In this document: positions 46,525-64,000 of the stretch, piece after piece
Position numbering within the stretch: the stretch's first letter is position 1
How the letters are laid out: each line of letters starts with the position of its first letter
Assembly (NCBI GenBank): GCA_977020255.1
Contig: CDROCS010005092.1
Coordinates: 1 to 64,000 of the forward strand
Length of the DNA: 64,000 bases
Source: Obrimoposthia wandeli
Taxonomy: Eukaryota
Reading direction: 5' to 3'
Notes under the pieces: model-generated
Databases searched by the model: none
What the model saw: only the letters and a program-made list of their open reading frames with translations
Told to the model about the DNA's origin: nothing
Made by a program: the position numbers and the translations under genes

Positions 46525-46566
46525 TTTCACGTTATGAAATAAGCATATTTATTTCATAACTTGAAA
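46525..46566. terminator. AT-rich inverted repeat at the ubiA / siderophore-cluster boundary
   Basis: GTTATGAAATAA-GCATAT-TTATTTCATAAC with extended TTTCA/TGAAA arms. Confidence 0.6.
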
Positions 46567-46803: not shown

Positions 46804-49708
46804 TCATTTAGCTCCAAAATTGACTAAGTTTTTTATCAACAACTCAGATAAAGTAGGGCCTATAGACATTAACGCATCTGGAGATAAAATATTGTCATGA
46901 GAAAATGGCAATCTAAACTGCACTAAATTACCCACAAATGGTGCCCATGACTTTTCTACATTCCAGCCTTCAGGTAGTGTCTTTTCAGCAACAAATAAGT
47001 GAACATTTCCTTGATACTTCTTAGTGGTTGCCCCTGATAATAAACGCACCGTATCATCATAATTCCCGACGATATCAGTAAACATTTTATCCTGTTCAGC
47101 TAACGACACTTCGTCTGATATATCATTCTCTGCTGCGGCTATAAATTGACGTTTTTCTCGTTCAACTTCTTCTTTTGCTTCGGCTTCAGTCGGTCGATTC
47201 CATTCTTGCCCTTCAGGTGGGTAGGTATCAAGTAAACCAACAAAAGAGACTTGCTCAGCTTGGCTTTCTAACTTTGCAGCTAACGCCATCGCAACGGTGC
47301 CACCAAACGAGTAACCAAGAAAATGGTAAGGTCCTTCAGGTTGTACCCGTTTAAGCGTATCGTAATAATGTTCAATAGCTGCGTCCATATCAGCACTTAC
47401 GGCAACAGCTCCATTGGGTCGAGGTGATTGCAAACCAATAATAGGGTAATTACCTTTGAGGTATTTCGGAAAACCTGTGTATTGCCATGAAAATCCTGAA
47501 CCAGGATTAATACATATTAATGGCACGCCTTGACCTTGCCGTATCGGTAAAATATGACCAAATCCTGCTTTTTCGGGATCGTGTCTTAATGTTTCATCAA
47601 CCAGCACTTCAGCGAGTCCTGCAACTGTTGGTGAGACCATTATTTGTCCGACAGAAACTGGCAACCCTAATGTTGTTCTTAGTGTTGCAGCGAGTTTCAT
47701 TGCTATTAAGGAGTGTCCGCCTAAATTAAAAAAGTTATCTTGTGCGGAGACATTTTCCACATGCAATAACTCTTCAAATGCCCGTGCAATAATAGATTCG
47801 GCGCCTGCAGAAGGACTTCTACCCGATAAATCTATGTTTTGCTCAGGATCCGGTAATAACTTTTTAGCTAATTTACCGTTGGCACTTAATGGGAACTCTG
47901 TTACCTCTACTAATGCAACAGGTACCATATGTGCAGGAAGTAATAGGGACAGTTCCGCTAAAATATTTTCATCAATAATATTCGTGTTTACCGTTATTTC
48001 TTTGATGTAATACCCCACGAGTTGACGGTTATCTCCTAGTGCATTGCTTAGTGGAGTATTGGCCAGTACCCTTGCGTGAACCGCTACCTGCTTTATGTGT
48101 TTAAGTTGTAGTAATGCTTGTTCGATTTCACCCATTTCAACTCTTAACCCACGGATTTTAAGCTGGTCATCGGTTCTCCCCAAATATTCAACGTTACCAT
48201 TGGCTAGCCACTTCGCCATATCACCGGTACGATACATTCTTTGTCCATGCTTAAATGGGTTAGCAATAAATCGGTCTGCGGTAAGTTCTTCTCTGTTCAA
48301 GTAGCCATTAGCAAGTTGCTTACCGGTTAAATAAAGTTCTCCAATAGCACCGATACCAACGGCGCGAAGCTGGTGATCTAATATATGCAATTCGGTATTC
48401 CATACCGGAGAGCCTATTGGCACCCCTTGTAATTCTGATCCAATAGCTTGGGCAGCAGCATAATGAGTCACATCAACAGCAGCCTCAGTTGGTCCATATA
48501 AGTTATACAACGGTGCGTGACATAATGATTGAAATTTCTCAGCTAATGCCACCGACAAGGCTTCTCCACTACAAAATACTCGCTGAAGTAAGCCATTCAT
48601 TTGAGGTAAGTGTGGTGAGTCCTCTACACAGTCAATAAACGCTGCCAACATAGAAGGCACAAAGTGCAACGTCGTTATATTTTCTGAGACAATAATCTCT
48701 AGTAGTGTTTCGGGATCTCGGTGGGCCTCGGGGGGAGCCATATATAAGCAGGCGCCTTGAATTAATGGCCAGAAAAATTCCCATACGGAAACATCAAAGC
48801 TTGAAGGTGTTTTTTGTAAAACAACATCAGTACCCGTTAGTTTATATTCATTTTGCATCCACAATAAGCGGTTAACAATAGCTTGGTGCGAGACAACAAC
48901 GCCTTTGGGCCGGCCGGTAGAGCCAGAAGTATAAATGACATAAGCAGCATCACTTGGCGAAATGTTCTGCTCTATTCTCGGTTCATGATTGGGCAATACG
49001 GTTGTATTACTGGCACCAGCATCACTGGTATCGTCAATTAACGACTCTATCAATATAATCTTGATAGACAACTGGCTAAACTCTCCTTCAGTAAATCGTG
49101 AAAAGTGTTCTTGAGTTGTGAGTAAAACATCAACATTCGCGTCAGACAACATCATCGCTAACCTTTCATCGGGGTAGGTACTATCTAGCGGTAAATAGGC
49201 TGCACCAACGTCAATAATTGACTGTAACGCAATACTCAATTCACAGCTTCGAGGAATGGCAACACCTATAATATGACTCGGTTTACTCTCCGGTGACTTT
49301 ATAATGTACGGTAACAAGCCTTGTGATACTTGCTCAACAATGCTGCGCATTTGCTGATACGTGAAAGTTTTGTGACTGTCTTTTAACGCTATTGCTGATG
49401 GGGATTTTCTCGCCTGCACACGCAATAATTCACGTAATGAATCGTTTGGTAATTCAATTGCGGTATCGTTGGCGAGATTAATTACATCAATATCATTTTC
49501 TGTTTGCATCGTTAACTGGGCTAAGGTTAGCGACGAGTCGTTTACCACCTGAGCAATAAGTTGAGTGAAGCGTTCAGCTAAACTTTGCGGCTCAGTAACG
49601 ACATCTCGGTATTCAAATAATACGCGAATATTTTTCCCAGGTAATACCAGAATCGTTAATGGGTAATGGGTATACCCCCTATTTTCGACATGCTCAATAG
49701 TCACACCG
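46804..49708 (-). CDS. NRPS 3' fragment (end of C2, A2 Ser, T2, TE); no credible independent start
   Basis: A2 pocket residues read DVWHFSLVDK; the first codons of the ORF-track model overlap the upstream frame. Confidence 0.7.
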
Positions 49709-52700
49709 CTATTGCACAGGATAATTTTCAACGACAAGTAAGGTATCAAAAAGGTTATAAATATTGACAAGACGTTGTATTTCTCCCAAACCTAAACAGT
49801 CATGCGACATCAAACTAATTTGTTGTTTTTGCAATTTAATTAGCTGTGACAAAAATGTTTCATTGGCGTTGAAATTAACGTTCACAGGCAGTGTATTACT
49901 AAACAGTCCTACCTGTTCATCTACACCGTTAATATCAGAAAAACGACCGGATACGGGACTCCCAAAAACGATAGTATCCCTACCTGTCATCGATCCTAGT
50001 TGTGCTGCCCATATACCTTGAATGAGTGTATTTAAGGTAATGCCATGCTGTCGACAAAATTCATTTATCTTTACCGTTAATTCGGTATTTAACGATCTAT
50101 GAAGCTCAGCAACGTGCGATGATTTTTGCTTGGCATTCGGATACAAAATTGTTGGTGTGACGTTTGTTAATGCAGATCTCCATTGAGCTTCAGCCTCTTG
50201 AGTTGCTCTATTCGCCATTTGATAGACAACGTCTTGATATCTACTGTTTGAGTCAACATTCAGCCTGTCAATATCATGATAACTGTTTAATAAATCACGC
50301 AATAGGATAGGCGTCGACCAGCCATCAATAATAAGATGATGAGCGGTGATCACAAGCTCATACTTAGCATCGCCCATCTTAATTAAAGCAATAAAGAATA
50401 ATCTTGCTTCATCTGCTGTATGCATTGCGCCTTGCTGACCCACATTAAAATGTCGATAGGCTGCTGTCATTTCAAAGGCGTGTAAGGCTTTTTCTTTTGA
50501 CGTTTCATTCATTTGGCTGAAATCGTGTTCAGTGACCGGACAATAACAACGAGCTTGCTCTATGGTCATTGACGGTATTAGCTGTAGCGGTTTTCCCGTT
50601 AGTTCAACATCAAATTTTGCGGCTAGCTGAGGGTATTTAAAGATTATGCGGGCGACGGCTTCTTGAAGTTTCGTGATGTTAACTTCACCATTAATTGTTA
50701 ATTTAGTGGTAAAGCTATATTGGCTATCGTCATCTGATACTTGTGTATGAAACAATAAACCCGCTTGTAATGGCAATGTTGGCAAAATAACCGATTGTTC
50801 GCCGTAATGCTCAACAAGTAATTTCACTTCATTAGGCGTTGGCATTATTGATAGCGCTTGGTGCCTATCGTTAAGTGCGTCAATATTGAGGTTAGCGTCT
50901 GTGCTTCGCACATTCACCTGTTTATCATCATGGCTAGTTTTGGCTAATTCAGACATAGAAACTACCATTTTACTTGGTGTTCTATCGGTGAAAATATCTT
51001 GAGGCTTTAGATCAAAGCCTTTTTTTCGCACGGCAATACTAAGCCTCATCGCGCTAATACTATCGCCTGCCATCTTGAAAAAGTCATCTTCAAGACCAAC
51101 ATTATCGAGACCTAGTATGGTTGCAATTTCCTCACATAGAACAATTTCTTCTCGTGTCGTCGGCAAGGCGAAATCTTGACTCACTATTGCTGGTTTAGGT
51201 AATGCTTGCTTGTTTATTTTACCGCTTACCGTGAGCGGCATTTCGAGCAAAATGGTGATAATAGCGGGTAGCATATAAGTAGGTAACGTTGATGCAAGAT
51301 GCTGGTAAATAGAGGCAATTATTTGCTCATTGGACAAGGGGTCATCGATAATGGTGCAATACGCCAACAGTCGATTACCATTGTCTGTTTCATCAAGAAT
51401 AATCGCGACTTCTTTGGTTACTTCAAGGCTTGATAATGCCGACTCAACATCACCTAATTCAATACGAAATCCTCTCACTTTAACCTGGTTATCGCAGCGG
51501 CCTACAAAAATCAATTCTCCATCAGTTGACCATCGAACAATATCGCCAGTAACATACATCACGTCGCCCATAACAAAAGGATCAGCGACAAATTTTGTTG
51601 CGGTTATTTCAGGTCTATTTAAATATCCTGCCGACATATTCTCGCCTGCTAGATAGAGTTCACCATTTACCCCCACAGGCACAGGCATTAATTTTTCATC
51701 AAGTACATATACTTTTGTATTTGCCAATGGCTGCCCTATAACTACATCTGCTGATTGTGAGGTTATTTCTTTGCTTGTTGCATAAACCGTAAATTCCGTT
51801 GGCCCGTATATATTGTGTACAGATATTGCTGAATGTTGTAGTGCCTGCCATAAAGAGGGAGGAACGGCTTCTCCACAGATAGTCATTAGTGCTGGTTGGT
51901 GCCGGCCTGATTCACATAACCCCGCTTGGACAAGTTGGGTCGCTAACGACGGCGCTACAGCCAACGTGTTTATTTTGTCTCTGTCGATTAGCTCGAGTAA
52001 GGTATATATATCCTGCTTTACCTCGTCAGCATATAAGTGCAATTTATGGCCTAACGACATCAAGATGATTGGATCCCATGAGGTATCAAATGATAATGAT
52101 CCCGTTAAAGCCACAGTAAGTTGATCACTTACTTCATCACTGTTATTGCTACTGATGTCGTTATTAATGCATGAATACACTTTGTCAGCTAACGCCGCGA
52201 CTAAATTGATTAATGCGCCATGAGAAACCATAACGCCTTTAGGGCGACCAGTAGAGCCTGAAGTGTAAAATACATAAGCAATATCATGCTTTTCAAATGT
52301 ATGCGCATGCATTGCTAAGGGGTGTTCATAGCAAGAATTTAGTAAGGCCAAGGTTGATTTATCGTCCAAAGACAAGGTATCAATTGTGCTAGGTAAAAGA
52401 TGCTTTTGCGCTTTCATTGTTAAGGTAATGCTAGGTATTTTATCTTCGCACATCATCGCTAAACGTTCAGCTGGATGATTTAAGTCCAAGGGTAAATACA
52501 CTGCACCAATGCTCATAATAGCAAACATCGAAATAATTGATTCAATAGTTCGGGGTAACGCTACTGCAACTAAATCCCCCGGTTCAACATTATGTGATAA
52601 GAGTAATCGACTTAATTGATTAATACGGCCAGAAAGCTGATTAAAATCTAAATGCTGCTCTTCAAATATAAGCGCCGTATTGTTGCCATGTTTTAGCGAT

Positions 52701-54175
52701 TGTTGCGCTAACAGTGTAACAATTGAACTGCCATATTGATGAGTGCTGAGATCACTCCCAGTTGACCATTGGGCTACTTTACTTGCTTCATTCGCTGTAA
52801 TTATTGACAGCGAGGCAATATTTTTTTCAGTTTTGTTTTCAGCATCAAGAGCATACTGCGTTAAAAGGTGAGTCAAACGCTGACCATGCAATCGTAACTC
52901 ATCTTTGTTATATCGCGATGAATTAGCAGATAACTCAATAGAGAGTTTACCCTGATGAACATAAACCCCAAATTCGATATCTTCTATCGGTCCTGTAGCA
53001 AGTTGATGAGTACTAGCACTAACGCCTGCAATATCTAAGGCATAATCAAATAACTTACAGTTTAGCGTCGCACTATATAAACGTTGTTGCCCGCCAGCTA
53101 ATCCGACATCGCGCTGAATTTGTTCCGCTTCATATTGTTGGTGCCGACGTACTTTTTTAATCTCCCTAGTCAATAAACCGATAACACTATTAAACGTATA
53201 TTCAGGTAATAACGTCACGACCAGTGGTAATAGGTTAACGGCGGTACCTAAAGTGGTTAATGCTTGAAAGCCCATTCTTCTCATCAACGGATAACCAATG
53301 CATATCGTTTCTTGCTGGGTGACTTTCGACAAATAAATCAGTATTGTGGCACTCGCAATATCGGCGATAGAAAAGTCAGCATGTTGTGCTATTTGTTGAC
53401 AGACATCATTAGGTAATGAAAATTTATGCCTGATAACGGCAGTATTTAAACCATCAGAGCCAATTGATGGTCGATATGACATCGATGCTTGAGGAGGTAT
53501 GTTCTCACAGTAATCTAACCAAAACTTTTTATCTTTTTCTTTCTTAATAGACATTTCATAAGTTAGATATTCAGCGATAACTTGGCTGTAAGGTGTAAAA
53601 GGACTGTCACCAATCACTTTGTTTGATATTAATGCTGAATAAATAGCAGCAATACGTTGCGTTAACGCAGTAAAACTAAATCCATCTACCATCAAATGGT
53701 GATAACGTTGGTACCAAAACCAGCGTTTATTTCCATTTTTTGCTGTAAGTTTAATAATTATATGATGATATAATTGTTCAGAGTCACTCGCTCTTGGTGC
53801 TTGCTGAATATCATTTTCCATTAATGATATGGCTTGCTCTTCATCAATATTTCCCATTGAATTATCAACAAGTGAGAGGTCAATAAAAATAGCTTCATTG
53901 GGCAGCTCAGGCATTGGCAATGAAGGGATCATTTGAACTGCCCCATCGGATTTATTTTCATAACTACTATGTACTGTATCTGCTTCAGCCAGTCCTAACT
54001 GAATTGCTTTTTGAAGCGCCACAACATCCATATCACCGCAAAGCTCAACGTATTGAGCAACGGTAAAAGTATTATTCTTTGTCGCTAATTGATCTGCTAA
54101 CCAAATGCCTAGTTGTGGTCCAACAATGGGAAAGTTTTCTACTGTAGAAGGTGAGGTAAAAATAGTATCGGGCAC
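49709..54175 (-). CDS. NRPS 5' fragment (C1-A1-T1-partial C2), 1488 aa
   Basis: GTG start with AAGGA RBS; stop TAG falls inside C2. Confidence 0.7.
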   Translation of the reverse strand: MPDTIFTSPSTVENFPIVGPQLGIWLADQLATKNNTFTVAQYVELCGDMDVVALQKAIQLGLAEADTVHSSYENKSDGAVQMIPSLPMPELPNEAIFIDLSLVDNSMGNIDEEQAISLMENDIQQAPRASDSEQLYHHIIIKLTAKNGNKRWFWYQRYHHLMVDGFSFTALTQRIAAIYSALISNKVIGDSPFTPYSQVIAEYLTYEMSIKKEKDKKFWLDYCENIPPQASMSYRPSIGSDGLNTAVIRHKFSLPNDVCQQIAQHADFSIADIASATILIYLSKVTQQETICIGYPLMRRMGFQALTTLGTAVNLLPLVVTLLPEYTFNSVIGLLTREIKKVRRHQQYEAEQIQRDVGLAGGQQRLYSATLNCKLFDYALDIAGVSASTHQLATGPIEDIEFGVYVHQGKLSIELSANSSRYNKDELRLHGQRLTHLLTQYALDAENKTEKNIASLSIITANEASKVAQWSTGSDLSTHQYGSSIVTLLAQQSLKHGNNTALIFEEQHLDFNQLSGRINQLSRLLLSHNVEPGDLVAVALPRTIESIISMFAIMSIGAVYLPLDLNHPAERLAMMCEDKIPSITLTMKAQKHLLPSTIDTLSLDDKSTLALLNSCYEHPLAMHAHTFEKHDIAYVFYTSGSTGRPKGVMVSHGALINLVAALADKVYSCINNDISSNNSDEVSDQLTVALTGSLSFDTSWDPIILMSLGHKLHLYADEVKQDIYTLLELIDRDKINTLAVAPSLATQLVQAGLCESGRHQPALMTICGEAVPPSLWQALQHSAISVHNIYGPTEFTVYATSKEITSQSADVVIGQPLANTKVYVLDEKLMPVPVGVNGELYLAGENMSAGYLNRPEITATKFVADPFVMGDVMYVTGDIVRWSTDGELIFVGRCDNQVKVRGFRIELGDVESALSSLEVTKEVAIILDETDNGNRLLAYCTIIDDPLSNEQIIASIYQHLASTLPTYMLPAIITILLEMPLTVSGKINKQALPKPAIVSQDFALPTTREEIVLCEEIATILGLDNVGLEDDFFKMAGDSISAMRLSIAVRKKGFDLKPQDIFTDRTPSKMVVSMSELAKTSHDDKQVNVRSTDANLNIDALNDRHQALSIMPTPNEVKLLVEHYGEQSVILPTLPLQAGLLFHTQVSDDDSQYSFTTKLTINGEVNITKLQEAVARIIFKYPQLAAKFDVELTGKPLQLIPSMTIEQARCYCPVTEHDFSQMNETSKEKALHAFEMTAAYRHFNVGQQGAMHTADEARLFFIALIKMGDAKYELVITAHHLIIDGWSTPILLRDLLNSYHDIDRLNVDSNSRYQDVVYQMANRATQEAEAQWRSALTNVTPTILYPNAKQKSSHVAELHRSLNTELTVKINEFCRQHGITLNTLIQGIWAAQLGSMTGRDTIVFGSPVSGRFSDINGVDEQVGLFSNTLPVNVNFNANETFLSQLIKLQKQQISLMSHDCLGLGEIQRLVNIYNLFDTLLVVENYPVQ

Positions 54176-54287
54176 TATAAAATCCTTTAATTAAGTGACG
54201 TTAAATTAATACCAATTCCACTTCCTGAACATCTCTACTGGCGATAAAATTGGTATAAGTTGTTGTGAACCTTAAAGCAGTTACCTA

Positions 54288-54464
54288 TTAAGTATTAGAT
54301 AAAAATGTCAGACATTTTTCACGCGCATCAGGTCCAAATACAACACGCCAGCCAGCAGGAATGCAGGTAAAGTTTGGCCACAAACTTTGCTGATCTTTAT
54401 CATTAACCAGTACGAAAAACTGATGTTGGCTGTTGTCAAATGGGTTTTGGTATTCGCTTTGCAT
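54288..54464 (-). CDS. MbtH-like (YbdZ-type) protein, 58 aa, probably truncated; not in the ORF track
   Basis: Translated by hand: MQSEYQNPFDNSQHQFFVLVNDKDQQSLWPNFTCIPAGWRVVFGPDAREKCLTFLSNT; NPFD, SLWP and PAGW motifs; AAGGA RBS; lies between fes and the NRPS. Confidence 0.9.
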   Translation of the reverse strand: MQSEYQNPFDNSQHQFFVLVNDKDQQSLWPNFTCIPAGWRVVFGPDAREKCLTFLSNT

Positions 54465-54502
54465 TATTTATCCTTAATAACCGCAATTTGCGGTTCCATG
54501 GG

Positions 54503-55897
54503 TTACGAAATTGTTGTTTTTTTTGATAAGATTTTCACTGGTGTTAGCCATTCTTGAAGACCTTTTATTAGTCCTTCTCGCCAACAAACCTGGTCGTGCC
54601 CTCCGCAATATTCCGTCAACATAACTTGATGGTCTGTATTAACAAGAGACTGATAAAAGTTATGGTTCAGAGCCTTTAAACGCGTTTCTTTACTGCCTAT
54701 TTGCATCACTATATTGACATTCTTATTAGCAATGCTATTCGTTAATACTTGAGTTGTTAGCCAACCATTTTTTGGTGCTTTAGTCGCATGTCCATCATTC
54801 ATCCCTTGCTGCATTAGTGATGGTGTTGGCCACCAAAATGAACCCGACTGACATATTACTTGATTAAACATGTCGGGACGGCTTAATCCGGCATACATTG
54901 CTGCCAAGCCGCCTAAGCTTTGTCCCACAACGCAACGTTGATGAGGAGACACTCTACCTTCGAACCAGCGATTAATTTCACTAAAAAGTTCGTCATTGAT
55001 TGCCTGCCAAAATAACGGGTTACAGCCTAAATCTACCGGTCGTTGTTTTTTTGAAACATGACCAATAAATACGTAAATTGCCGGGGATAAACAATGCTCA
55101 TCGGTTAACATTTGTAATGCAGAAAAAATAGGCATTACTTCAGCCCAGCTTTCGCCATCTAGAATCAAAACCATCGGTTTTTCAGTGTGTAATTCAGCGG
55201 TGCTATTTTTAGTTTCAAATAACCAAATTGGACGAGAGCTTTGCAATAAAGAACTTGTCCAGCTGAAAGTTCGTAACGATTGGGCGGCCTTGTGCTTTGG
55301 TAAAAATTGCAATGCTTCAGAAATATCCCATTTTTGCCAAGCCTTATGTTGCTTCGTCCATGGTAAATATAATAGAGAACGGTTTTGTCCCCATAAACAA
55401 TATTTAGGGCTAATGATGTTTAGCGGATCCGCAGCAGCGAAGGCTAGCATTTCACGCCACCATCGACGATGATTTTCTTTATTAGCATTGCTTTCATTAT
55501 CGGTATTTTTTACTGAGTTTATTGCCGGTTTCTTTAATGAATCTAATGGGGCTAAATTATCAACTTTTATCGGAATAAAAAAGTAAGTACCGTGCCAATC
55601 TGATGATATTAAGGTCTGCCAATACCATACATCTGTGCCAGAAATTCTGCTCAGTTTTTGAGGCTTAGTATGGTGTTCTGTGAGGCAATTCACTTCGATA
55701 TATACCGTATGAGTTGAAGAAACATTTTCATTGCCCTCAAGGTCACGCCATAAAAAAGTAACATGGCACTTTTCCCCTAAATGCTGAACCAAGGGGGTGC
55801 TTAACGTTTTTATTTCTGACCACCAATCAGCATGGCCAACATTCTCTTGAAGTAACAAATTATTTCCTGCGAGTAATAAAGTCATTTTCTTGTACAA
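54503..55897 (-). CDS. fes: Enterochelin-esterase-family ferric siderophore esterase
   Basis: VTFLWRD, GTDVWYW, ADPLN, ILDGESW, GQSLGG, SGSFWWP and GGHD motifs. Confidence 0.92.
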   Translation of the reverse strand: MYKKMTLLLAGNNLLLQENVGHADWWSEIKTLSTPLVQHLGEKCHVTFLWRDLEGNENVSSTHTVYIEVNCLTEHHTKPQKLSRISGTDVWYWQTLISSDWHGTYFFIPIKVDNLAPLDSLKKPAINSVKNTDNESNANKENHRRWWREMLAFAAADPLNIISPKYCLWGQNRSLLYLPWTKQHKAWQKWDISEALQFLPKHKAAQSLRTFSWTSSLLQSSRPIWLFETKNSTAELHTEKPMVLILDGESWAEVMPIFSALQMLTDEHCLSPAIYVFIGHVSKKQRPVDLGCNPLFWQAINDELFSEINRWFEGRVSPHQRCVVGQSLGGLAAMYAGLSRPDMFNQVICQSGSFWWPTPSLMQQGMNDGHATKAPKNGWLTTQVLTNSIANKNVNIVMQIGSKETRLKALNHNFYQSLVNTDHQVMLTEYCGGHDQVCWREGLIKGLQEWLTPVKILSKKTTIS

Positions 55898-55947
55898 AAA
55901 AATTGTCTGACCTATTTTTTATTGCAAGTAATATAATCGAATGAATA

Positions 55948-55966
55948 ACCGATGATAATGATTTTT
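55948..55966. promoter_or_regulatory. Candidate Fur box for the fes-mbtH-NRPS operon
   Basis: ATGATAATGATT core; 12/19 match to GATAATGATAATCATTATC counted by eye. Confidence 0.6.
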
Positions 55967-56026
55967 TTTTGTTTGACGGGGCTATAGGGATCTTAGTCAC
56001 ATAGAGATAAGTTAATTAAAAAGGTA

Positions 56027-56177: not shown

Positions 56178-56260
56178 AAGACTATGTTCCCGTTAACTGC
56201 TGTTAATTAAAAAATAAGCCAACAACAACTCAAGGGAGCATAATCAATATCGATTGAGCG

Positions 56261-57868
56261 CTATAATTTTTGTTTTGCCGTTACCTCAATACTGTCTAAT
56301 GGTAGTGCCCAAATACTATTTTGTTCGCCGTGGTAGGCGCGTTTTTTGGTTTTTTGCGCGCTGTAATAAAATATTGCTGAGAATATCAAGGCAGTGATAT
56401 CAACCATCAAATTTGCAAAATATATTGAGTTCCATTGCGTTAAATTAGGTATCAATGCTGTAGCTAAACTGGTCAGCGGTATAGCGATACAAACTAATGC
56501 TAACAATTGCTGAAGGTGGATAGCAGATCGTGCAGCCCCGCGGGTAAAGCTATAAATTAATGCAATAAAAAACATCATATAGTAACAAGTCATAAAGCCA
56601 TTATTAACAGGTATACTCGCTAAGTATAACCATTTATTCGCAAGCATTGCGCTAACTAAACCTAAAATTGAGCCTAAGCTGATACCAATAGTAAGTGCTG
56701 CCATAAAGCGGTTTGATCGACTTTGTTTGGCTTGTTTTTGTCGACGTTTTTCAAGCCAAAGTAAATTGCCACTGTAGAATAAAAATGCGCCCAATAATCC
56801 CATAACAAAATATAACCAACGTCCTAAATCACCGCCATAACTGCCAAAATGTAGAGAGAAAAAACTCACTACAATCGGTGTATACGTTTCATTTTCACTT
56901 GTTGCTGCACTATTGTACTGCACTGCAAAAGTATAGGGATTCATGTAAATAATGTCGCCGGTATTGCTACGCATCATTTGTTGAGGATTAATAATACTAA
57001 TGGCAACTACGGGTCTAACTGATGACAAGCCTGAAAACTTAAGTGTGTCTATCTGATAACCATCAGTAAGTTCCTTTACTTGTTTTATGTAGCTTGAAAT
57101 GGGAGGTAATTGCTTAACATTGTATTCAACCGCTGCGCTTTTACTACGTTCAAAGAGCGGTTTCTCACCATAAATAACACTTAATCCACCATAAAAAACG
57201 TCGTGAAAAGCAAAAACAACGACGCTCCAAGCAATGATTAAATGGAAGGGTAAACTAATGATACCAACAAGGTTATGACTGTCTAACCAAAAACGATTGC
57301 TACCTTTATTTTTTCTTAAAGCGAAAAAGCTTTTTACCAAAGTTGGCAGAAGAAAAATAACGCCTGACACTAACGCTACAAAATATAAAACAGCGGCAAT
57401 ACCTAAAATCAATACACCGAGATCCTCATGACCAACTTTACCGACAATACCAGCGGTGCGATGCAGCATATCAATGAGCTCTCCTAACTCATTGCTTGGG
57501 CTTAATTGCGTAATGAGCTCGCCATTGTCAGACAACGTTGCATGGTTCAGTACACTGTTAAGTTGAAGGTCACGACCACCACCTTGTTGATACCATGTCA
57601 TGGGGGACAACTGTGGATTAAAATTAAGCGTAAAGCCCTGCTGGGCTTTATCAAATTTAGCTATTACTTGTGAGACGAGCTTATCAGAGTCTTCCATTGC
57701 TATCGGTGATAAATGGCTACTCGACGGCGTAGCCCAATGGCCAATTTCAGCTTTGAACATGGTTAATGAACCGGCATAAAAGCCAATAAACAACACTAAA
57801 CCAGTAAGGATGCCTGTCCAAGTATGAAGGGTTTGATAGGTGCGTATAATATCGCTTCGAATTCTCAT
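56261..57868 (-). CDS. PepSY-associated TM protein (iron-regulated membrane protein, putative ferric-siderophore reductase)
   Basis: YQTLHTWTG, DMLH, DSHNLVG and FSLHFGSYGG conserved His motifs. Confidence 0.85.
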   Translation of the reverse strand: MRIRSDIIRTYQTLHTWTGILTGLVLFIGFYAGSLTMFKAEIGHWATPSSSHLSPIAMEDSDKLVSQVIAKFDKAQQGFTLNFNPQLSPMTWYQQGGGRDLQLNSVLNHATLSDNGELITQLSPSNELGELIDMLHRTAGIVGKVGHEDLGVLILGIAAVLYFVALVSGVIFLLPTLVKSFFALRKNKGSNRFWLDSHNLVGIISLPFHLIIAWSVVVFAFHDVFYGGLSVIYGEKPLFERSKSAAVEYNVKQLPPISSYIKQVKELTDGYQIDTLKFSGLSSVRPVVAISIINPQQMMRSNTGDIIYMNPYTFAVQYNSAATSENETYTPIVVSFFSLHFGSYGGDLGRWLYFVMGLLGAFLFYSGNLLWLEKRRQKQAKQSRSNRFMAALTIGISLGSILGLVSAMLANKWLYLASIPVNNGFMTCYYMMFFIALIYSFTRGAARSAIHLQQLLALVCIAIPLTSLATALIPNLTQWNSIYFANLMVDITALIFSAIFYYSAQKTKKRAYHGEQNSIWALPLDSIEVTAKQKL

Positions 57869-58164
57869 CTATACCACTGTAATAAAAAATAGAGGCTGTA
57901 GAGCATAATGTTTGCTGAGCCTAAATAAATAAAAGCCTTGATGCCTGTTTTGAATAAATAACTGAAAGTTAAAATAATGAGCCAAATAGGGCTGATCATC
58001 CACATATTAAACTGTACTTTTACGGGGGCATCAATGCCTCCGGGACCATACCAAGCAAACATACCGATCAGAGCAAAACTGAGTGTTAAACCCAGAGTTA
58101 GCCCCACGAATGTTTTTAGCCACCAATGTGGCTGAATTTTTTCAAGCGCACTTAATCGTGTCAT
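57865..58164 (-). CDS. Small membrane protein of the PepSY operon
   Basis: 99 aa with 3 TM segments; 4-bp overlaps with both neighbours. Confidence 0.75.
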   Translation of the reverse strand: MTRLSALEKIQPHWWLKTFVGLTLGLTLSFALIGMFAWYGPGGIDAPVKVQFNMWMISPIWLIILTFSYLFKTGIKAFIYLGSANIMLYSLYFLLQWYR

Positions 58165-58448
58165 TTAACTCTTCCTTGGGGTTTTATTAACGCAATGAGC
58201 GGAATAACAATAAGTGCTGATATAGCAGTAAAGAACCAAATAAATACAGCGGCACTGACGGCGAATAACTGTAGCCAAATAACGAGTGCGACTAAACAGC
58301 AGAGATAGGAAATTATACGCCAAAGCTTAGCTAATGGTTTGCGAATAAAGTGTTGATGCTTATTAGTAATATATAGAATAAATGCGCCTAATAGCGTTAT
58401 TCCTAGCGCGAATAGTTGTAACAGCAAAGCACCCTTCTTCATTAACAT
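58161..58448 (-). CDS. Small membrane protein (DUF3325-like) of the PepSY operon
   Basis: LYITNKHQ followed by TM helices; start uncertain (58448 or 58514). Confidence 0.65.
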   Translation of the reverse strand: MLMKKGALLLQLFALGITLLGAFILYITNKHQHFIRKPLAKLWRIISYLCCLVALVIWLQLFAVSAAVFIWFFTAISALIVIPLIALIKPQGRVK

Positions 58449-58677
58449 TAAAAATTTTGCAAATGTTACTGCAAACACACAAAAGATACAAATAGAAATG
58501 ATAATAATTACCATTTGCAGTTAAGGTGTTGTTCAAGTAAAGTGACGTCGATTTACTACCGTTGCGTCAATACATTTTTTGATGGTTATTTAACATTCGA
58601 ATAGCAATATTGGCTAATGTAATGATTCAAATGGTATCAATTTTTAATTACTTTATAGATAAAAAACAAGGAAAATC

Positions 58678-60747
58678 ATGGGAAGCCCATTATTTAAAGT
58701 TAACGCTATTACTGCCACTTTGTTTAGTACATTAATGGTATCGCAAGTCTTTGCTGCTGATAAAATCGACGTAGCAAAGCAAATTGAATCAATTGAAGTG
58801 ATCACGATACATGGTGAAAAAAGGGATCTTTCTTTGAAAGACACCACCTCATCGGTTTCTGTTATTACGGAAGAGGCACTAAAGTCACTGCAAAGTTTAA
58901 CCGTATCTGATGCAATATCTGACATTGCCAACGTGGTTGTTCTTTCGGGGGCCGCTCCTGATATTCGTGGCGTTTCAGGCAATGGTGCTGCGGGTGGTTT
59001 TAATTCAATAAGTGGCGGTGCCAAGGCGCGTGTATCTACATTAATTGACGGCGTTATAGAGCCCTTTGTCGCTGATTTAACCGGTGATTCCGGCATTTGG
59101 GACATAGAACAAATTGAAGTTTTTCGAGGACCTCAGTCAACCACTAATGGGCGAAATAGTATTGGCGGCGCATTATATATTAAAACTAAAGATCCGACTT
59201 TCGATTGGGAAGGTGCTGCACGTATTGGTTACCGTAATAAAAATAATTTTGTCGACACTTCAATCATGGCTTCTGGCCCTATCATCGATGATGAATTAGC
59301 CTTTAGAATAACCGCCCAAAAGTTAGATGGAAATACGATAAATAGCGGTTTAGTTTATGAAAATAACCCAATAACTTTTGATCAAAGCGAAGTAAAAACC
59401 AACCGTTTAAAAACAAAACTATTGTGGAAGCCAGCAAAGCTTGAAGACTTTTCAGCAATGCTGACTTATTCAAGTAGTAATGAAAAAGGTGATACGGGAA
59501 GAAATTATTATACCGGAGACGATCCATGGAAGTTTATTCCGCTTTTTCAACGCTATATGGATACGGAGTCTAAAAGTACGAGTTTAAAAGTTGATTATCA
59601 ACTCAATGCTTCAATGTCGATTGATGTATTAATGTCTCATCTGGATTATAAATATGGCTTTGATACTTACGAAATCGCAGCAGCACGACATTCAAAAGTA
59701 CGGGTAAATGAAACAGATAAAATGCTTGATGCCAAACTGAATTTTGGCTTAAATAGTGACCTGTTCACAGGTTTTGTCGGCTTGGCCTATTTTGACCGCA
59801 AGCAAGATTTAAATAGTCGCGGCGCCTCAACCTATGATGGTAAAGACAGTAGCGACTCTAAAGCTATTTACGGTGAGTTATCTTATACTATTGCCGATGA
59901 CTGGACCGTTATTGTGGGTGGTCGTATTGAAGACGAAAGTCAACAACGTGACTTTAGTATACTGTCCAGAGGTGCATTAATAGCTGATCAACTTAATAAT
60001 AGTAAAAAAGTAAAGTTACCAAAGTTAGTGATACAACATGCTCTGTCTGATAACACAACGCTATCAGCAAGTGCTCGCCGTGGTTATAACTCGGGTGGCG
60101 GCGCCCTCACCTTCGTCACTAATGAGTATTATTACTACGATGCCGAAACAGTCAATACTTATGAGTTGAGTGCAAGAAGTAGCTTTGATAACGGTAACAT
60201 TAATATCAGTACTAACATTTTTTACAATGACTATAACAATTATCAAGCCTTAAGCTCAACTCGAAAAATTACCAATATGGATGACGCAGAAACTTATGGT
60301 TTGGAACTTGAAGGTTCAGGTATGGTAACTGATAATTTACAAATAAATGCCAGCTTAGGGTTACTTAAAACTGACATTACCGACGGGGGCGAAAACTATC
60401 CTAATGTAACGGGTAATGAACTTAGTTCGGCGCCAGGTTTTACCGCGAAAATTGGCGGTAGATATTGGCTAACAGAACAGTTTAATATGGGGATCTCCAG
60501 CAATTATATTGATGAATATTACGGTGATTTTGCCAACACTGAAGAACGTGTTGCCGGCGGTTATTTACTGACACGTATTAATGTAAATTACGAAAATGAT
60601 AACTGGCTCGTTACTGCTTTTGTTAATAATGCTCAAAACAAAAAAGAAGTGACGCTTAGAGCACCGGCAGATCGTAGAAATCCTACAGGCTTTGCCGCTA
60701 TTGTCGATCCGAGAAATTTTGGTATATCGGCAACCTACAGTTTTTAA
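58678..60747 (+). CDS. TonB-dependent siderophore receptor (FyuA-like)
   Basis: Signal peptide, TonB-box-like ESIEVITI, plug motif IEQIEVFRGPQSTTNG and terminal Phe (ATYSF). Confidence 0.92.
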   Translation: MGSPLFKVNAITATLFSTLMVSQVFAADKIDVAKQIESIEVITIHGEKRDLSLKDTTSSVSVITEEALKSLQSLTVSDAISDIANVVVLSGAAPDIRGVSGNGAAGGFNSISGGAKARVSTLIDGVIEPFVADLTGDSGIWDIEQIEVFRGPQSTTNGRNSIGGALYIKTKDPTFDWEGAARIGYRNKNNFVDTSIMASGPIIDDELAFRITAQKLDGNTINSGLVYENNPITFDQSEVKTNRLKTKLLWKPAKLEDFSAMLTYSSSNEKGDTGRNYYTGDDPWKFIPLFQRYMDTESKSTSLKVDYQLNASMSIDVLMSHLDYKYGFDTYEIAAARHSKVRVNETDKMLDAKLNFGLNSDLFTGFVGLAYFDRKQDLNSRGASTYDGKDSSDSKAIYGELSYTIADDWTVIVGGRIEDESQQRDFSILSRGALIADQLNNSKKVKLPKLVIQHALSDNTTLSASARRGYNSGGGALTFVTNEYYYYDAETVNTYELSARSSFDNGNINISTNIFYNDYNNYQALSSTRKITNMDDAETYGLELEGSGMVTDNLQINASLGLLKTDITDGGENYPNVTGNELSSAPGFTAKIGGRYWLTEQFNMGISSNYIDEYYGDFANTEERVAGGYLLTRINVNYENDNWLVTAFVNNAQNKKEVTLRAPADRRNPTGFAAIVDPRNFGISATYSF

Positions 60748-60762
60748 TGAGTTAATCTTTCA

Positions 60763-60790
60763 GCTAGCAGTGAATTTTAGTACTGCTAGC
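60763..60790 (+). terminator. Hairpin after the receptor gene
   Basis: GCTAGCAGT-N10-ACTGCTAGC. Confidence 0.6.
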
Positions 60791-60828
60791 CGTTACTTTT
60801 AGAGGCTGTTAAAAAATATGATGGGGTT

Positions 60829-61112
60829 TATACCCAAGTCACTTGAAGATGCAGGATTGTGCAAGTCGAGAAAGGGTTAGCACCAAGGCATTGATTGAAG
60901 ACGAAACCATGGATGGTGAAGGTAGGGCGAAGCAGGATGCCAGAGCCGAGAATGGTTGTTCCATTGTCAAAATCAATAACGTCGGAGATGACCCTTTAGC
61001 GCCTTGCCTGCAGGGATGCAGGTACTTATGTTTAGTCTGGAACAATAAACATGTGTTCTTGAACAATTTATCCTCGCTTAAAATTGGTCAATAACTTATT
61101 ACATTTGGTATA
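60829..61112 (+). repeat. Longest, composite ERIC-like repeat (284 bp)
   Basis: TATACCC...TTGGTATA ends; segments shared with 4361, 22880, 24021 and 44289; nested inverted repeats. Confidence 0.9.
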
Positions 61113-61190
61113 AAAAGGCTAAAGCAATTGAGAGGACAACCTTGAATGTGCAAGCTGTTCACTCGCTTTGTTTATAATTCCGGCGTCTTA

Positions 61191-62285
61191 TTAAACTAAA
61201 AACTGTTCTAAATGGCGCATTTTTCGACGTGATTCTACGCCTTCTGCCAACATCTCTATTAATCGTTCTGTATCACTCCACCCAATACAAGCATCAGTAA
61301 TAGATTGCCCATAATTCAATGGCGTAGCGCGTAATGAGTTGTTTGTATTGAGCGCTTGATTACCACCTTTTAAAAAGCTTTCTACCATCACAGCTGCAAT
61401 CGCGCTAGAGCCGTGGGCGAGTTGTCGACAAAGATCTTCAACAACACGCAATTGATTCAAATGTAATTTACGGCTGTTACCATGACTGCAATCAATCATA
61501 AGTTTTGGACATAAATCACGAGATTTTAGCAACGCTTCTACGGCCGTTATGTCTTGATGATAATAATTGGGTTGCTTGCCACCACGCATAATAGCGTGAC
61601 AAGTTGCATTACCTTTACTTTTAACCGCACACATCCCACCATTGAAGTCAGGCATTGGGTATAGGTGTGGGTGTGCAGCCGATGTCATCGCATCAGCTGC
61701 TATGGTGATGTTGCCGTCAGTGCCATTTTTAAAACCAATGGGACAGTTTAGACCTGAAGCCATTTGTCTATGCACCTGTGATTCTGTTGTTCTAGCGCCT
61801 ATTGCGCCCCAACTCATTAAATCAGATAGATAAAAAAAACTGGTCACATCAAGGAATTCAGTTGCTGTTGTCAGCCCTAAATCATTAATATCTACTAACA
61901 GTTTTCTGGCGGTCAATAATCCAGTAATCAGGTCATCACTCCCATCTAAATACGGGTCAAAAATCAATCCCTTCCAACCAACGGTCGTACGAGGTTTTTC
62001 AAAATAAGTACGCATAACAACATGCAGTTGTTGTTGATAATTAGTCCCAAGCGCTACTAATTTGTGTGCATATTCTAATGACGCTTCGGTATCATGAATA
62101 GAGCAGGGGCCTATGACCACCATCAGTCGATCATCTTGGCCATTAAAAATTTTACTTATCGTATGACGACTTTGTGCAATATGTTGTACCGTATTTTGAG
62201 AGCTCGGGTATTGTCGAATAACCTCTGATAACGAGGGGATAGCTATTTTTGCAGATGCGTTAACAACTGATGCAAGTTTTTCCAT
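61191..62285 (-). CDS. Class I-alpha DAHP synthase (AroF/G/H-like), siderophore-cluster copy
   Basis: IGPCSIHD, YFEKPRTTVGWKG, GAIGARTTESQVHR, GFKNGTDG and DCSHGNS motifs. Confidence 0.95.
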   Translation of the reverse strand: MEKLASVVNASAKIAIPSLSEVIRQYPSSQNTVQHIAQSRHTISKIFNGQDDRLMVVIGPCSIHDTEASLEYAHKLVALGTNYQQQLHVVMRTYFEKPRTTVGWKGLIFDPYLDGSDDLITGLLTARKLLVDINDLGLTTATEFLDVTSFFYLSDLMSWGAIGARTTESQVHRQMASGLNCPIGFKNGTDGNITIAADAMTSAAHPHLYPMPDFNGGMCAVKSKGNATCHAIMRGGKQPNYYHQDITAVEALLKSRDLCPKLMIDCSHGNSRKLHLNQLRVVEDLCRQLAHGSSAIAAVMVESFLKGGNQALNTNNSLRATPLNYGQSITDACIGWSDTERLIEMLAEGVESRRKMRHLEQFLV

Positions 62286-62320
62286 GTTATTGAACCTTGA
62301 TCCTTAAATAGTGTGTTGAC

Positions 62321-63584
62321 TTATTTTGAAGATGTCGCTGAATCTAGTGAAGCCTTGGATGCGGAAATGTTAGGTATAGATTCTTTATGATTTACCCATC
62401 GCCACAACATTATTGGTGCAATAAGAGTAAGTAAAATGGTTAACATTGCTACCCAATCCATACCGACTATTTTGTGATCTGCAGTAGTTGTTAATACCGC
62501 AGCAGATAATAAACCAGCAGCGCCGGATGCAACATTACTCACAGTATTATTAATTGACATAAAGGCGGCTCGTTGCGGGGGAGCAGGCAAATGGCTAACA
62601 ATACTTGCCGTAACACTCGTACGAACGGTACTTACGGTCATCATTAAGGCGAAAAGTACAAATAAGTGACTTGTTTGCGGTGTAGATATAAAAATAATGT
62701 AAATAATTAAGGCAACTAGCAAGGCACTAACAATATGCAGCTGATGACGAATACCTTTATCAAATAACCTGCCTGAAAATTGCAACATAATAAAACTGGC
62801 TAATCCCCCACCAAAATACAGGGCAGACATATGCTCTCGTGGAAACGATAAATTAAACTGAAAATAGGCTGAAAAATTACTAATAATAAGAAAGTGCGCA
62901 AAGATTTGTATCGCAACCACTAACAGCGCTATTTTTACTTTAAATTGTGACACTAGTTGACGTACAGCAGACGATTTCTGAGCTGTTTGAGGCTGAATAT
63001 GTTGCGTCATAACAGGAAACATTATCATGCAAGCTACGGCGAGCATGATGCCAAGTGAGCCAAAAAGCCAAAAAATTTATTTGCCATGAAAAGTACAGTG
63101 ATACCAATAATGATGATGGCACCATAATGATGGCGGCAATTGAAAAAGCACTACCAATGAAAGCCATAACTCTACCGCGGTGAGATGGTGGGGTAACATC
63201 AATAACGGCAGCCATCAACACTGATGACGCAGGCCCAGTAAAACAGCCCGATAGGGTAAACAAAAGCATTAAGGCAATGGGGGATGTCGCAAAACCACAT
63301 AAAATTAAACAAATACCACGTAATAATAAAAATATAACCAGTACCGATTTACGGTCATATTTATCAAGCTGCTCCGCCAGTAACCATGTCATTGCCGCAG
63401 AGCCAAACATTGTCCCGCCAATTAAATAGCCTATATGTGCAGGATTAAAATTAATACTCTCAACTAAGTCTGGACCCAATGGAACCACCATCATGAATCC
63501 ACCAAGAGATATTATATTAATTAAAAAAGCTAACCTGATCACAAGGTTATTAGGTATCGACTGCTCGGTGATCGGAAAATTCAT
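62321..63584 (-). pseudogene. MFS transporter (probable siderophore exporter) with a +1 frameshift in an A6 run at 63070-63075
   Basis: Motif A-like LDKYDRKS in the 5' ORF; removing one A gives WQINFWLFGSLGIMLAVACM and a single 420-aa ORF. Confidence 0.85.
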
Positions 63585-63687
63585 ATTCTCGTCCTGAGAT
63601 CTAAATAAAATAAATAAACAAGAGATCATAAGTAACCTCTTGAAATAACAATGGAGCGATTGTACACATCAATTCGCACTAATTACA

Positions 63688-63706
63688 AATGATAATGGTT
63701 TTTATT
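63688..63706. promoter_or_regulatory. Fur box in the divergent MFS-DAHP / isochorismate synthase promoter
   Basis: AATGATAATGGTTTTTATT; 15/19 match to AATGATAATCATTATCATT. Confidence 0.75.
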
Positions 63707-63901
63707 TAGATTGACGGGGTGGGATTAGCATGCGAACATCTAGTCACTTACTGCTATTTGTCGGAATTAATTGTTCCATTGTTCATCGTGTTTAGTTATG
63801 CAGATGCTTAGTACTTAGCAGCTAACTAGCTACATGTTTCGGTTGTTCCACAGTGAGGAATAATCAATAAATGGAATTTCAGTTTAAAAAGGAACTTCAC
63901 A

Positions 63902-64000
63902 ATGAAACGTTTTACAGACGCTAATAATGATCAGCATGTTTCAAATATAAATAAAAAATCAGCGGCTCAATTTATTTTTACATCAAAGGGTCGTTCACTA
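63902..64000 (+). CDS. 5' end of a probable isochorismate synthase (EntC/DhbC-like); truncated by the window edge
   Basis: AAGGA RBS; MKRFTDANNDQHVSNINKKSAAQFIFTSKGRSL, where FIFTSxxRSL resembles the EntC/DhbC N-terminal FFFxSxxRS segment; cluster context. Confidence 0.55.
   Translation, partial: MKRFTDANNDQHVSNINKKSAAQFIFTSKGRSL

What the first reader, a model, noticed from the sequence alone, without database searches (positions are those of the whole stretch)
46804..64000. Catecholate siderophore cluster predicting a (DHB-X-Ser)n product with an unknown spacer residue
Seen: fes-mbtH-NRPS in the same order as E. coli fes-ybdZ-entF, but the NRPS is dimodular (C-A-T-C-A-T-TE), with a cluster DAHP synthase, an MFS exporter, a TonB receptor, a PepSY-TM operon, Fur boxes and a probable entC start. 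Established: this architecture makes DHB-spacer-Ser/Thr siderophores (bacillibactin, vanchrobactin, chrysobactin, turnerbactin), and the vanchrobactin locus also carries its own DAHP synthase and MFS. Inference: this is a triscatechol-type pathway, probably accessory here since it abuts ubiA; I do not know of a characterised example in this lineage.
Basis: partly seen in the sequence, partly recalled or inferred. Interest (0 to 1): 0.8.

Follow-up and report, generated by a model that had tools for sequence, protein, structure and literature searches.

The report
Broken catechol siderophore gene island
A Colwellia-type marine bacterium carries an acquired gene island for an enterobactin-like iron scavenger with an unidentified spacer amino acid, but here the synthetase and exporter genes are both broken while the uptake genes are intact.

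Summary
Relatives continue with entC-E-B-A-D.

- The NRPS is two ORFs. A 23-nt deletion in the second condensation domain (about 49711) shifts the frame.
- The MFS gene carries an extra T at 63070.

Three cluster-bearing relatives (about 95% nt and 81% aa identity) have both genes intact. The uptake and hydrolysis genes and 19 backbone genes are also intact here. As encoded, this copy should not make or export the product.

Module 2 reads as Ser (DVWHFSLVDK). Module 1 reads DTDATCIVYK. That signature is conserved in a 22-member clade from Colwellia, Shewanella, Psychromonas and Microbulbifer. It lacks D278, G301 and D331, which are shared by the Orn and Lys references and by every other member of the sister clade examined. 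The spacer stays unknown; Gly is one lead.

The island sits after ubiA, where two sister genomes run on to plsB (directly in one, after three small genes in the other).

It is a new member of a known kind, of moderate interest. Earlier notes of this scan on the same DNA (s1-198781, s1-198747) had already flagged the breaks and the odd code.

The parts
46565..46803 (.). Left junction of the island. Backbone homology to sister genomes ends at 46576. A 10-nt direct repeat AAGCGTAAAC lies at 46565-46574 and 46680-46689.
   Evidence: blastn to L013/L014 stops at 46576/46529; homology to the cluster scaffold L012 starts at 46760; repeat found only at these two places
46804..49770 (-). NRPS 3' fragment: tail of C2, A2 (Ser code DVWHFSLVDK), T2 (GGHSL), TE (GYSFG). 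Homologous coding runs from 46807 to about 49710.
   Evidence: Pfam AMP-binding, PP-binding, Thioesterase; NCBIfam EntF model positions 407-1291, 948 bits; code; motifs
49700..49720 (-). Site of the 23-nt deletion in C2. The reading frame ends ...ENYPVQ-stop and the gene continues in another frame.
   Evidence: Alignments to L002 and L012 both show the same 23-nt gap; translation; tblastn frame switch from -1 to -2
49709..54175 (-). NRPS 5' fragment: starter C1, A1 (code DTDATCIVYK), T1, and C2 truncated at Pfam position 362 of 456. There is no E domain.
   Evidence: Pfam; code; C2 aligns to the post-E C domain of CbsF and to TnbF C2
54288..54464 (-). mbtH-like gene, 58 aa, intact
   Evidence: Translation matches the 58-aa PF03621 product of L008
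54503..55885 (-). fes, enterochelin esterase, intact
   Evidence: NCBIfam NF007758, 397 bits against a cutoff of 222; Pfam Enterochelin_N and Esterase; 91% aa identity to L012
55948..55972 (.). Fur-box-like sequence upstream of fes (13/19)
   Evidence: Consensus scan
56261..57868 (-). PepSY_TM inner-membrane protein (putative periplasmic ferric-siderophore reductase), intact
   Evidence: Pfam PF03929, E 7e-55; 97.8% aa identity to L012; dN/dS 0.15
57865..58514 (-). Two small membrane ORFs (99 and 117 aa) co-oriented with PepSY_TM
   Evidence: Conserved in L008, L009 and L012; no Pfam or NCBIfam family
58494..58518 (.). Best Fur-box-like sequence (15/19), at the 5' end of the 117-aa small ORF (58161-58514) on the edge of the divergent PepSY operon / TBDR promoter region
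   Evidence: Consensus scan
58678..60747 (+). TonB-dependent receptor, intact. The best solved relatives are 5NEC and 5FP1, entries titled 'TonB-dependent siderophore receptor'.
   Evidence: Pfam Plug and barrel; PDB hits 5NEC and 5FP1, E about 2e-13; 98.5% aa identity to L012, dN/dS 0.07
61191..62285 (-). Cluster-borne DAHP synthase (AroH/AroG type), intact
   Evidence: NCBIfam NF009396, 476 bits against a cutoff of 463
62321..63584 (-). MFS exporter (EntS/MxcK-like) broken by +1 T at 63070 (T6 against T5 in relatives)
   Evidence: Two overlapping ORFs, each with MFS_1; indel mapped against L002 and L012; relatives have intact 415/420-aa genes
63685..63709 (.). Fur-box-like sequence in the MFS/entC divergent promoter (13/19), conserved in L009
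63902..64000 (+). First 33 codons of entC (isochorismate synthase); runs off the window
   Evidence: N-terminus aligns with the L009 EntC (PF00425 product, 412 aa)

Best explanation
The region is a horizontally acquired catecholate-siderophore island in a Cognaticolwellia/Colwellia genome, inserted downstream of ubiA. Its design is the turnerbactin type. EntCEBA make and load 2,3-DHB. A dimodular NRPS (starter C, A1 for X, T, C, A2 for Ser, T, EntF-like TE), helped by an MbtH protein, would build DHB-X-Ser and oligomerise it through serine esters. An EntS-like MFS would export the product. A TonB-dependent receptor, a PepSY_TM reductase and a Fes esterase would recover the iron. A cluster DAHP synthase would feed the shikimate pathway. 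In this copy the NRPS is cut inside C2 by a 23-nt deletion and the exporter by a +1 frameshift, so as encoded the strain cannot make or export the compound. It keeps intact uptake and hydrolysis genes. The low dN/dS and the absence of further stops indicate that the lesions are recent. X is not assignable: the A1 signature DTDATCIVYK belongs to an uncharacterised clade derived from the cationic-spacer A domains. Shown: gene content, lesions, codes, synteny. Inferred: chemistry, loss of production, use of foreign siderophore.
For: Domain and family assignments. Relatives carry entC-E-B-A-D plus the same MFS, DAHP, TBDR, PepSY, fes, mbtH and NRPS genes. The NRPS is intact in relatives at 2464, 2466, 2476 and 2432 aa. 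The same 23-nt gap appears against both L002 and L012, and the +1 T at 63070 likewise. All 19 backbone genes have the same lengths as in L013/L014, and kbl, tdh, glpE, glpG, ubiC and ubiA look intact. dN/dS is 0.07-0.30 with no additional stops. The code extraction is validated: it returns DSDDGGLVDK and DVWHFSLVDK for T. turnerae TnbF, as published in PMC3795760. The A1 clade has support 1.0 and is sister to the cationic A1 domains. In L013/L014 ubiA is followed by plsB without the cluster, directly in L014 and after three small genes in L013. Kbl is 99% identical to a Cognaticolwellia MAG.
Against: Only one assembly of this DNA is available, and the source looks like a mixed or metagenomic assembly, so the lesions cannot be checked at read level. 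The +1 T lies in a homopolymer, a classic error site. Neither the deletion allele nor the intact flank was found in JGI metagenome contigs, so there is no independent confirmation. entE, entB and entA of this genome lie beyond the window. No inner-membrane importer is in the cluster, so the uptake route is inferred.
Confidence: 0.72

Rival explanations
1. The cluster is functional and the two frame breaks are assembly or sequencing artefacts. The strain makes the siderophore like its relatives.
For: The MFS lesion is one extra T in a T5/T6 run. All catalytic motifs are intact (HHxxxDG twice, both carrier serines, GYSFG). dN/dS is low and there are no other stops.
Against: A clean 23-nt deletion is not a typical base-calling error. 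There are zero frame problems in 19 backbone genes of the same contig, against two in the 17-kb cluster.
Confidence: 0.22
2. The spacer is glycine, so intact orthologues make (DHB-Gly-Ser)3. That compound is methylocystabactin (SERglyCAM), already described in 2025.
For: By the same alignment columns, the Gly-activating A2 of LgrA reads DIANLCIIYK. It shares C301, I322, I/V330 and Y331 with DTDATCIVYK. The three acidic or small residues shared by every cationic-type spacer code examined (D278, G301, D331) are all lost. Position 299 varies T/D/N within the clade, as expected if it no longer contacts a side chain. The methylocystabactin A1 was also unpredictable from its code (PMC12435222). No precursor-supply gene is present in any relative.
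Against: The code differs from the canonical Gly code DILQLGLIWK at 8 of 10 positions. D239 is retained, and basal members also have D299, which would suit a cationic or polar side chain. No Methylocystaceae protein appeared among the close A1 relatives. No assay exists.
Confidence: 0.3
3. The spacer is still a cationic amino acid recognised by a remodelled pocket (Lys, Orn, Arg or a shorter diamino acid), so the product is a known or near-known member of the DHB-CAA-Ser suite.
For: The A1 clade is sister, with support 1.0, to the Orn/Lys/Arg-type A1 domains of homologous NRPSs. It keeps T236 and an acid at 239, as in DTEDLGLVDK. Basal members carry two acids, D239 and D299.
Against: D278 and D331 are invariant in TnbF, CbsF and the Yersinia, Vibrio and Marinomonas homologues but are replaced here by A and Y, and G301 by C. 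The Colwellia-type code keeps only one acid.
Confidence: 0.2
4. The broken production genes with intact uptake genes are a selected 'cheater' genotype that pirates the siderophore made by intact-cluster relatives.
For: Both lesions hit production or export. The TBDR and PepSY_TM genes are the most conserved against L012 (98.5% and 97.8% aa; dN/dS 0.07 and 0.15). An intact near-identical cluster exists in nature (L012). Precedent: a non-producer uses methylocystabactin through a conserved receptor (PMC12435222).
Against: Two lesions in one genome cannot separate selection from recent neutral decay. The NRPS fragments show equally low dN/dS. fes, mbtH and the DAHP synthase, which are not needed for piracy alone, are also intact.
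Confidence: 0.3

Closest known systems
Turnerbactin locus (tnb; TnbF) of Teredinibacter turnerae
   Same: Esterase-mbtH-NRPS order. Dimodular C-A-T-C-A-T-TE without an E domain. A2 code DVWHFSLVDK. C2 homologous to the post-E type C domain (35% identity to TnbF C2, 37% to CbsF C2). EntS-like MFS and adjacent entCEBA-type genes (PMC3795760).
   Different: A1 code DTDATCIVYK against DSDDGGLVDK (L-Orn). This locus has a PepSY_TM operon and its own DAHP synthase. The NRPS and MFS genes are frameshifted here.
Chrysobactin / frederiksenibactin / vanchrobactin / ruckerbactin / mediterraneabactin NRPSs (DHB-D/L-CAA-L-Ser suite)
   Same: Same biosynthetic logic and the same Ser module. The A1 domains form the sister clade (PMC11912440, PMC8480324).
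   Different: Their homologues examined here carry D278, G301 and D331 in A1 (DSEDMGYIDK, DSEDMGFIDK, DAEDMGFVDK, DSLDLGLVDK). The window's clade has A, C and Y at these positions. There is no E domain here.
Methylocystabactin, (DHB-Gly-L-Ser)3, of Methylosinus/Methylocystis
   Same: Dimodular DHB-X-Ser NRPS whose first A domain could not be predicted from its code. A non-producer uses the product through a conserved receptor (PMC12435222).
   Different: Alphaproteobacterial. Its NRPS did not appear among the relatives retrieved here, and its A1 code was not available for comparison.
E. coli enterobactin fes-ybdZ-entF
   Same: Gene order. An EntF-like A(Ser)-T-TE half (NCBIfam EntF model, 948 bits over positions 407-1291).
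   Different: EntF has one module. Here an extra C-A-T module inserts a spacer residue.
Receptor plus PepSY_TM catechol uptake pairs (Piu-type, as I recall them)
   Same: A TBDR next to a PepSY_TM membrane protein. The best solved relatives of the TBDR are 5NEC and 5FP1, which I recall to be PiuD and PiuA.
   Different: Similarity is weak (E about 2e-13, partial coverage). The PDB titles say only 'TonB-dependent siderophore receptor'. No solved relative exists for the PepSY_TM protein, and no PiuC-like gene is present.

Membership tests
Triscatechol DHB-spacer-Ser siderophore BGC (tnb/cbs/vab type) | 2,3-DHB genes entC, entE, entB, entA adjacent | tested here: inconclusive
   Only the first 33 codons of entC lie in the window. 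Close relatives L008-L011 carry entC-E-B-A-D at that position, and L012 shows at least entC there.
Triscatechol DHB-spacer-Ser siderophore BGC (tnb/cbs/vab type) | One dimodular NRPS, C-A-T-C-A-T-TE, in a single reading frame | tested here: not met
   All seven domains are present, but they are split into two ORFs by a 23-nt deletion in C2. Relatives are intact.
Triscatechol DHB-spacer-Ser siderophore BGC (tnb/cbs/vab type) | Second A domain with Ser code DVWHFSLVDK, and an EntF-like TE | tested here: met
   the extraction is validated on TnbF.
Triscatechol DHB-spacer-Ser siderophore BGC (tnb/cbs/vab type) | MbtH-like protein and Fes-type esterase next to the NRPS | tested here: met
Triscatechol DHB-spacer-Ser siderophore BGC (tnb/cbs/vab type) | A catechol product made under iron limitation | not testable with these tools
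   Needs culture, CAS/Arnow assays and LC-MS/MS.
Cationic-spacer subgroup (Orn/Lys/Arg) | A1 signature D-x-x-D-x-G-x-[VI]-D-K | tested here: not met
   The window's A1 reads DTDATCIVYK. TnbF, CbsF and the Yersinia, Vibrio and Marinomonas homologues all fit the pattern.
D-spacer subgroup (cbs/vab) | Epimerisation domain between T1 and C2 | tested here: not met
   A linker of about 55 aa only. CbsF has about 440 extra residues there.
Gly-spacer subgroup (bacillibactin / methylocystabactin) | Gly-specific A1 (canonical DILQLGLIWK) | tested here: not met
   The code differs at 8 of 10 positions. There is only a partial resemblance to the LgrA Gly domain. Non-canonical Gly codes exist, so function is not excluded.
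Enterobactin (single-module EntF) cluster | Single C-A-T-TE NRPS | tested here: not met
   Two modules.
Fur-regulated iron locus | Fur boxes at promoters | tested here: inconclusive
   Matches of 13-15/19 at three promoter regions, but 40 such sites occur in the AT-rich window.

The most novel reading that the evidence does not exclude
The DTDA(T/D/N)CIVYK clade of dimodular NRPSs is found in Colwellia sp. UCD-KL20, Psychromonas arctica and other Psychromonas, several Microbulbifer, Shewanella salipaludis and many metagenome contigs. It may make a triscatechol siderophore whose spacer is none of those known so far (not Gly, Orn, Lys or Arg), for example a small polar or short diamino residue. 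That would add a new chemotype to the DHB-X-Ser family in cold marine gammaproteobacteria. The window would then be a recent non-producer that still takes the compound up.
Probability: 0.35. Interest if true: 0.55.

Novelty: new member of a known kind. Interest (0 to 1): 0.4.

Why it matters
Triscatechol siderophores are among the strongest iron chelators. Their spacer residue sets the chirality of the iron complex and decides who can pirate it (PMC11912440). An uncharacterised spacer signature shared by culturable Colwellia, Psychromonas, Shewanella and Microbulbifer strains is a concrete, cheap target for natural-product work. The window itself pairs broken production genes with intact uptake genes, and a 95%-identical intact cluster exists in a public metagenome. 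That makes it a usable natural case for studying loss of siderophore production in marine populations. It does not change how such pathways are understood.

Tried and rejected
- Exact look-up of the window's DAHP synthase, to extend the contig beyond 64000: not on record.
- Two JGI metagenome scans, one for the deletion junction and one for the conserved flank. Both returned zero, so they are uninformative.
- Paper searches for the A1 code strings and for the tail motif CIVYK/CIIYK: nothing relevant.
- Attempt to retrieve the Methylosinus methylocystabactin NRPS for a code comparison. It was absent from both protein searches, and the paper has no held supplement.
- The high PDB score to LgrA first looked like a special Gly affinity. 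It is the sum of two A-domain matches.
- The glpE/glpG ORF overlap looked like a third frameshift. It is only an upstream alternative start.
- The Microbulbifer metallophore paper (PMC13573596) concerns other clusters.
- Cluster-member names for DVFSACIVYK-type proteins gave no substrate clue.
- A cluster DAHP synthase in the vanchrobactin locus could not be confirmed from the papers read.


Full report
**What is there**

ORF listing and family scans confirm the gene set.
- Minus strand:
  - an NRPS in two pieces, 49709-54175 (1488 aa: Condensation, AMP-binding, PP-binding, Condensation) and 46804-49770 (988 aa: AMP-binding, PP-binding, Thioesterase)
  - a 58-aa MbtH gene at 54288-54464
  - fes at 54503-55885 (NCBIfam enterochelin esterase, 397 bits against a cutoff of 222)
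  - PepSY_TM at 56261-57868, preceded by two small membrane ORFs
  - an AroH/AroG-type DAHP synthase at 61191-62285
  - an MFS transporter in two overlapping pieces at 62321-63629
- Plus strand: a TonB-dependent receptor at 58678-60747. At 63902-64000 there is an ORF start whose 33 residues align with the N-terminus of the EntC of a Colwellia MAG.

The order fes-mbtH-NRPS matches E. coli fes-ybdZ-entF. The 3' NRPS piece matches the EntF model over positions 407-1291 (948 bits).

**The two lesions**

The NRPS pieces overlap in different frames. tblastn with intact relatives switches frame at about 49712-49776.

Nucleotide alignments were made to L002 (Colwellia MAG DT_22, 81% aa identity) and to L012. 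L012 is a metagenome scaffold about 95% identical in DNA, carrying the intact 2464-aa NRPS P0001. Both alignments show the same clean 23-nt gap in the window, right after ...ENYPVQ in the second condensation domain. The upstream product ends at Pfam Condensation position 362 of 456.

The MFS gene has one extra T at 63070 (T6 against T5) relative to both relatives, whose genes encode 415 and 420 aa.

Everything else in the cluster is full length and close to L012: TBDR 98.5%, PepSY_TM 97.8%, DAHP synthase 95.6% and Fes 90.9% aa identity. The catalytic motifs of the NRPS are intact.

Nei-Gojobori dN/dS against L012 is 0.12-0.18 for the NRPS pieces, 0.09-0.13 for the MFS pieces, 0.07 for the TBDR and 0.15 for PepSY_TM. 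There are no further stops. The lesions are therefore recent, or else artefacts.

Against a general quality problem: 19 backbone genes between 29.5 and 46.5 kb have the same lengths as in the sister contigs L013/L014, and kbl, tdh, glpE, glpG, ubiC and ubiA score as complete. I could not find the deletion allele elsewhere. The JGI metagenome collection lacks even the intact flank, and the window's own genome is not in the exact-protein index.

**Context in relatives**

Four Colwellia-type contigs (L008-L011) carry entD-entA-entB-entE-entC. Divergent from these lie MFS, DAHP synthase, TBDR, small ORFs, PepSY_TM, fes, mbtH and NRPS. L012 has the same layout, with entC at its edge.

Shewanella (L003) and Psychromonas (L004) keep entCEB(A), fes and the NRPS but vary the transport genes. 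No relative carries a gene for an unusual precursor.

**Organism and insertion**

Kbl is 99% identical to a Cognaticolwellia sp. MAG protein and 96-97% identical to Colwellia sp. M166, Colwellia sp. MB02u-10 and C. aestuarii.

In two sister contigs, kbl-tdh-glpE-glpG-fliL-ubiC-ubiA runs on to plsB without any siderophore genes. It does so directly in L014 and after three small genes in L013. DNA homology to the window stops at 46576.

Cluster-bearing relatives have other DNA after the NRPS. Named Colwellia hits are many for Kbl but only two for the NRPS. G+C content is unremarkable.

The cluster is therefore an accessory insertion after ubiA. A 10-nt direct repeat brackets the first 115 nt of the junction.

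**Adenylation specificities**

I aligned 238 A domains from the 120 best homologues and read the ten Stachelhaus columns. A2 reads DVWHFSLVDK (Ser) and A1 reads DTDATCIVYK.

The extraction returns the textbook codes for Gly, Thr, Asp and Asn domains in the same alignment. For T. turnerae TnbF it returns exactly the published DSDDGGLVDK and DVWHFSLVDK (PMC3795760).

The pattern DTDA(T/D/N)CIVYK is confined to a 22-sequence clade with support 1.0. One Microbulbifer member has S at position 278. The clade comprises Colwellia sp. UCD-KL20, an uncultured Shewanella, S. salipaludis, Psychromonas arctica and other Psychromonas, four Microbulbifer, and metagenome proteins.

That clade is sister, again with support 1.0, to the A1 domains of homologous DHB-X-Ser synthetases. 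These read as follows:
- DSEDMGYIDK (Dickeya CbsF, Lys)
- DSEDMGFIDK (Yersinia)
- DAEDMGFVDK (Vibrio)
- DSLDLGLVDK (Marinomonas, Pseudoduganella, Azospirillum)
- DSDDGGLVDK (TnbF, Orn)

All of these keep D278, G301 and D331. The window's clade has A, C and Y at those positions.

No paper in the library contains these codes. No characterised catechol siderophore from these genera with such a synthetase was found.

**What X might be (inference only)**

- The loss of the two conserved acids, a narrower-looking C301/I322/Y331 set and the T/D/N variability at 299 argue against Orn, Lys or Arg.
- The Gly-activating second A domain of LgrA reads DIANLCIIYK in the same columns. It shares C301, I322, I/V330 and Y331.
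- (DHB-Gly-L-Ser)3, methylocystabactin, was found in 2025 from an NRPS whose first A domain was likewise unpredictable (PMC12435222).
- Against Gly: D239 is retained, D299 is present in basal members, and the code is distant from the canonical Gly code.

My odds are Gly about 0.3, another small or polar residue about 0.3, cationic about 0.2, and other about 0.2.

There is no E domain. C2 aligns with the post-E C domain of CbsF (37% identity) and with TnbF C2 (35%). TnbF shows the same situation and incorporates L-Orn (PMC3795760). If chiral, an L-configured spacer is therefore expected.

**Uptake side**

The best solved relatives of the TBDR are 5NEC and 5FP1 (E about 2e-13). The PDB titles give only 'TonB-dependent siderophore receptor'; I recall these entries as the catechol receptors PiuD and PiuA.

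The PepSY_TM protein has no solved relative. From what is known of PepSY_TM proteins (my own knowledge, not tested here), I infer periplasmic reduction. Fes would hydrolyse the ester backbone. No inner-membrane importer is in the cluster.

Fur-box-like sequences sit at three promoter regions: 15/19 at 58500-58518, and 13/19 at 55954-55972 and 63691-63709, the last conserved in L009. However, 40 sites in this AT-rich window reach 13/19 or better.

**Verdict**

It does not hold for a product from this genome.

The locus is a new member of a known kind. Its value lies in the uncharacterised A1 clade, which is testable in cultured strains, and in the pairing of a non-producer with an intact relative. 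Earlier notes of this scan on the same DNA had already flagged the broken genes (s1-198781) and the code (s1-198747). I checked both independently.

Noticed in passing
window 60830-61103: The TBDR/DAHP-synthase intergenic region differs completely from the 95%-identical scaffold L012. It holds short repeat pieces that recur at 4358-4417, 22880-22924 and 24022-24108, like a small intergenic mobile or REP-type element.
   Followed up: partly
window 46565-46574 and 46680-46689: The 10-nt direct repeat AAGCGTAAAC occurs only at these two places. The first copy lies exactly where homology to cluster-free sister genomes ends, so it may be a scar of the island's insertion.
   Followed up: partly
window 39065-40183: A 1.1-kb stretch with a 296-aa ORF (39150-40040, no NCBIfam family) lies between waaA and the AsnC-type regulator. 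It is absent from sister contigs L013/L014, so it is a second small insertion in the backbone.
   Followed up: no
window 37056-37649: A short (197-aa) PepSY_TM-type protein is encoded in the conserved backbone, also in L013/L014, separate from the cluster's 535-aa PepSY_TM gene.
   Followed up: no
window 54503-54530 (fes 3' end): The C-terminal tail of Fes differs in length and sequence between the window, L012 and L009 through small indels after the conserved domain. It looks like natural variation, not a lesion.
   Followed up: yes
L003:7493-8260: The Shewanella relative has a 255-aa remnant with only part of a TonB-receptor barrel next to fes. This suggests decay of the receptor there while a second TBDR lies downstream of the NRPS.
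   Followed up: no
P0317 / P0320 (Marinomonas posidonica, M. aquiplantarum): These 2452-aa homologues have code DSLDLGLVDK and a length that suggests no E domain, although the Marinomonas mediterranea product is reported to contain D-Orn. The genus may hold both stereo-variants.
   Followed up: no
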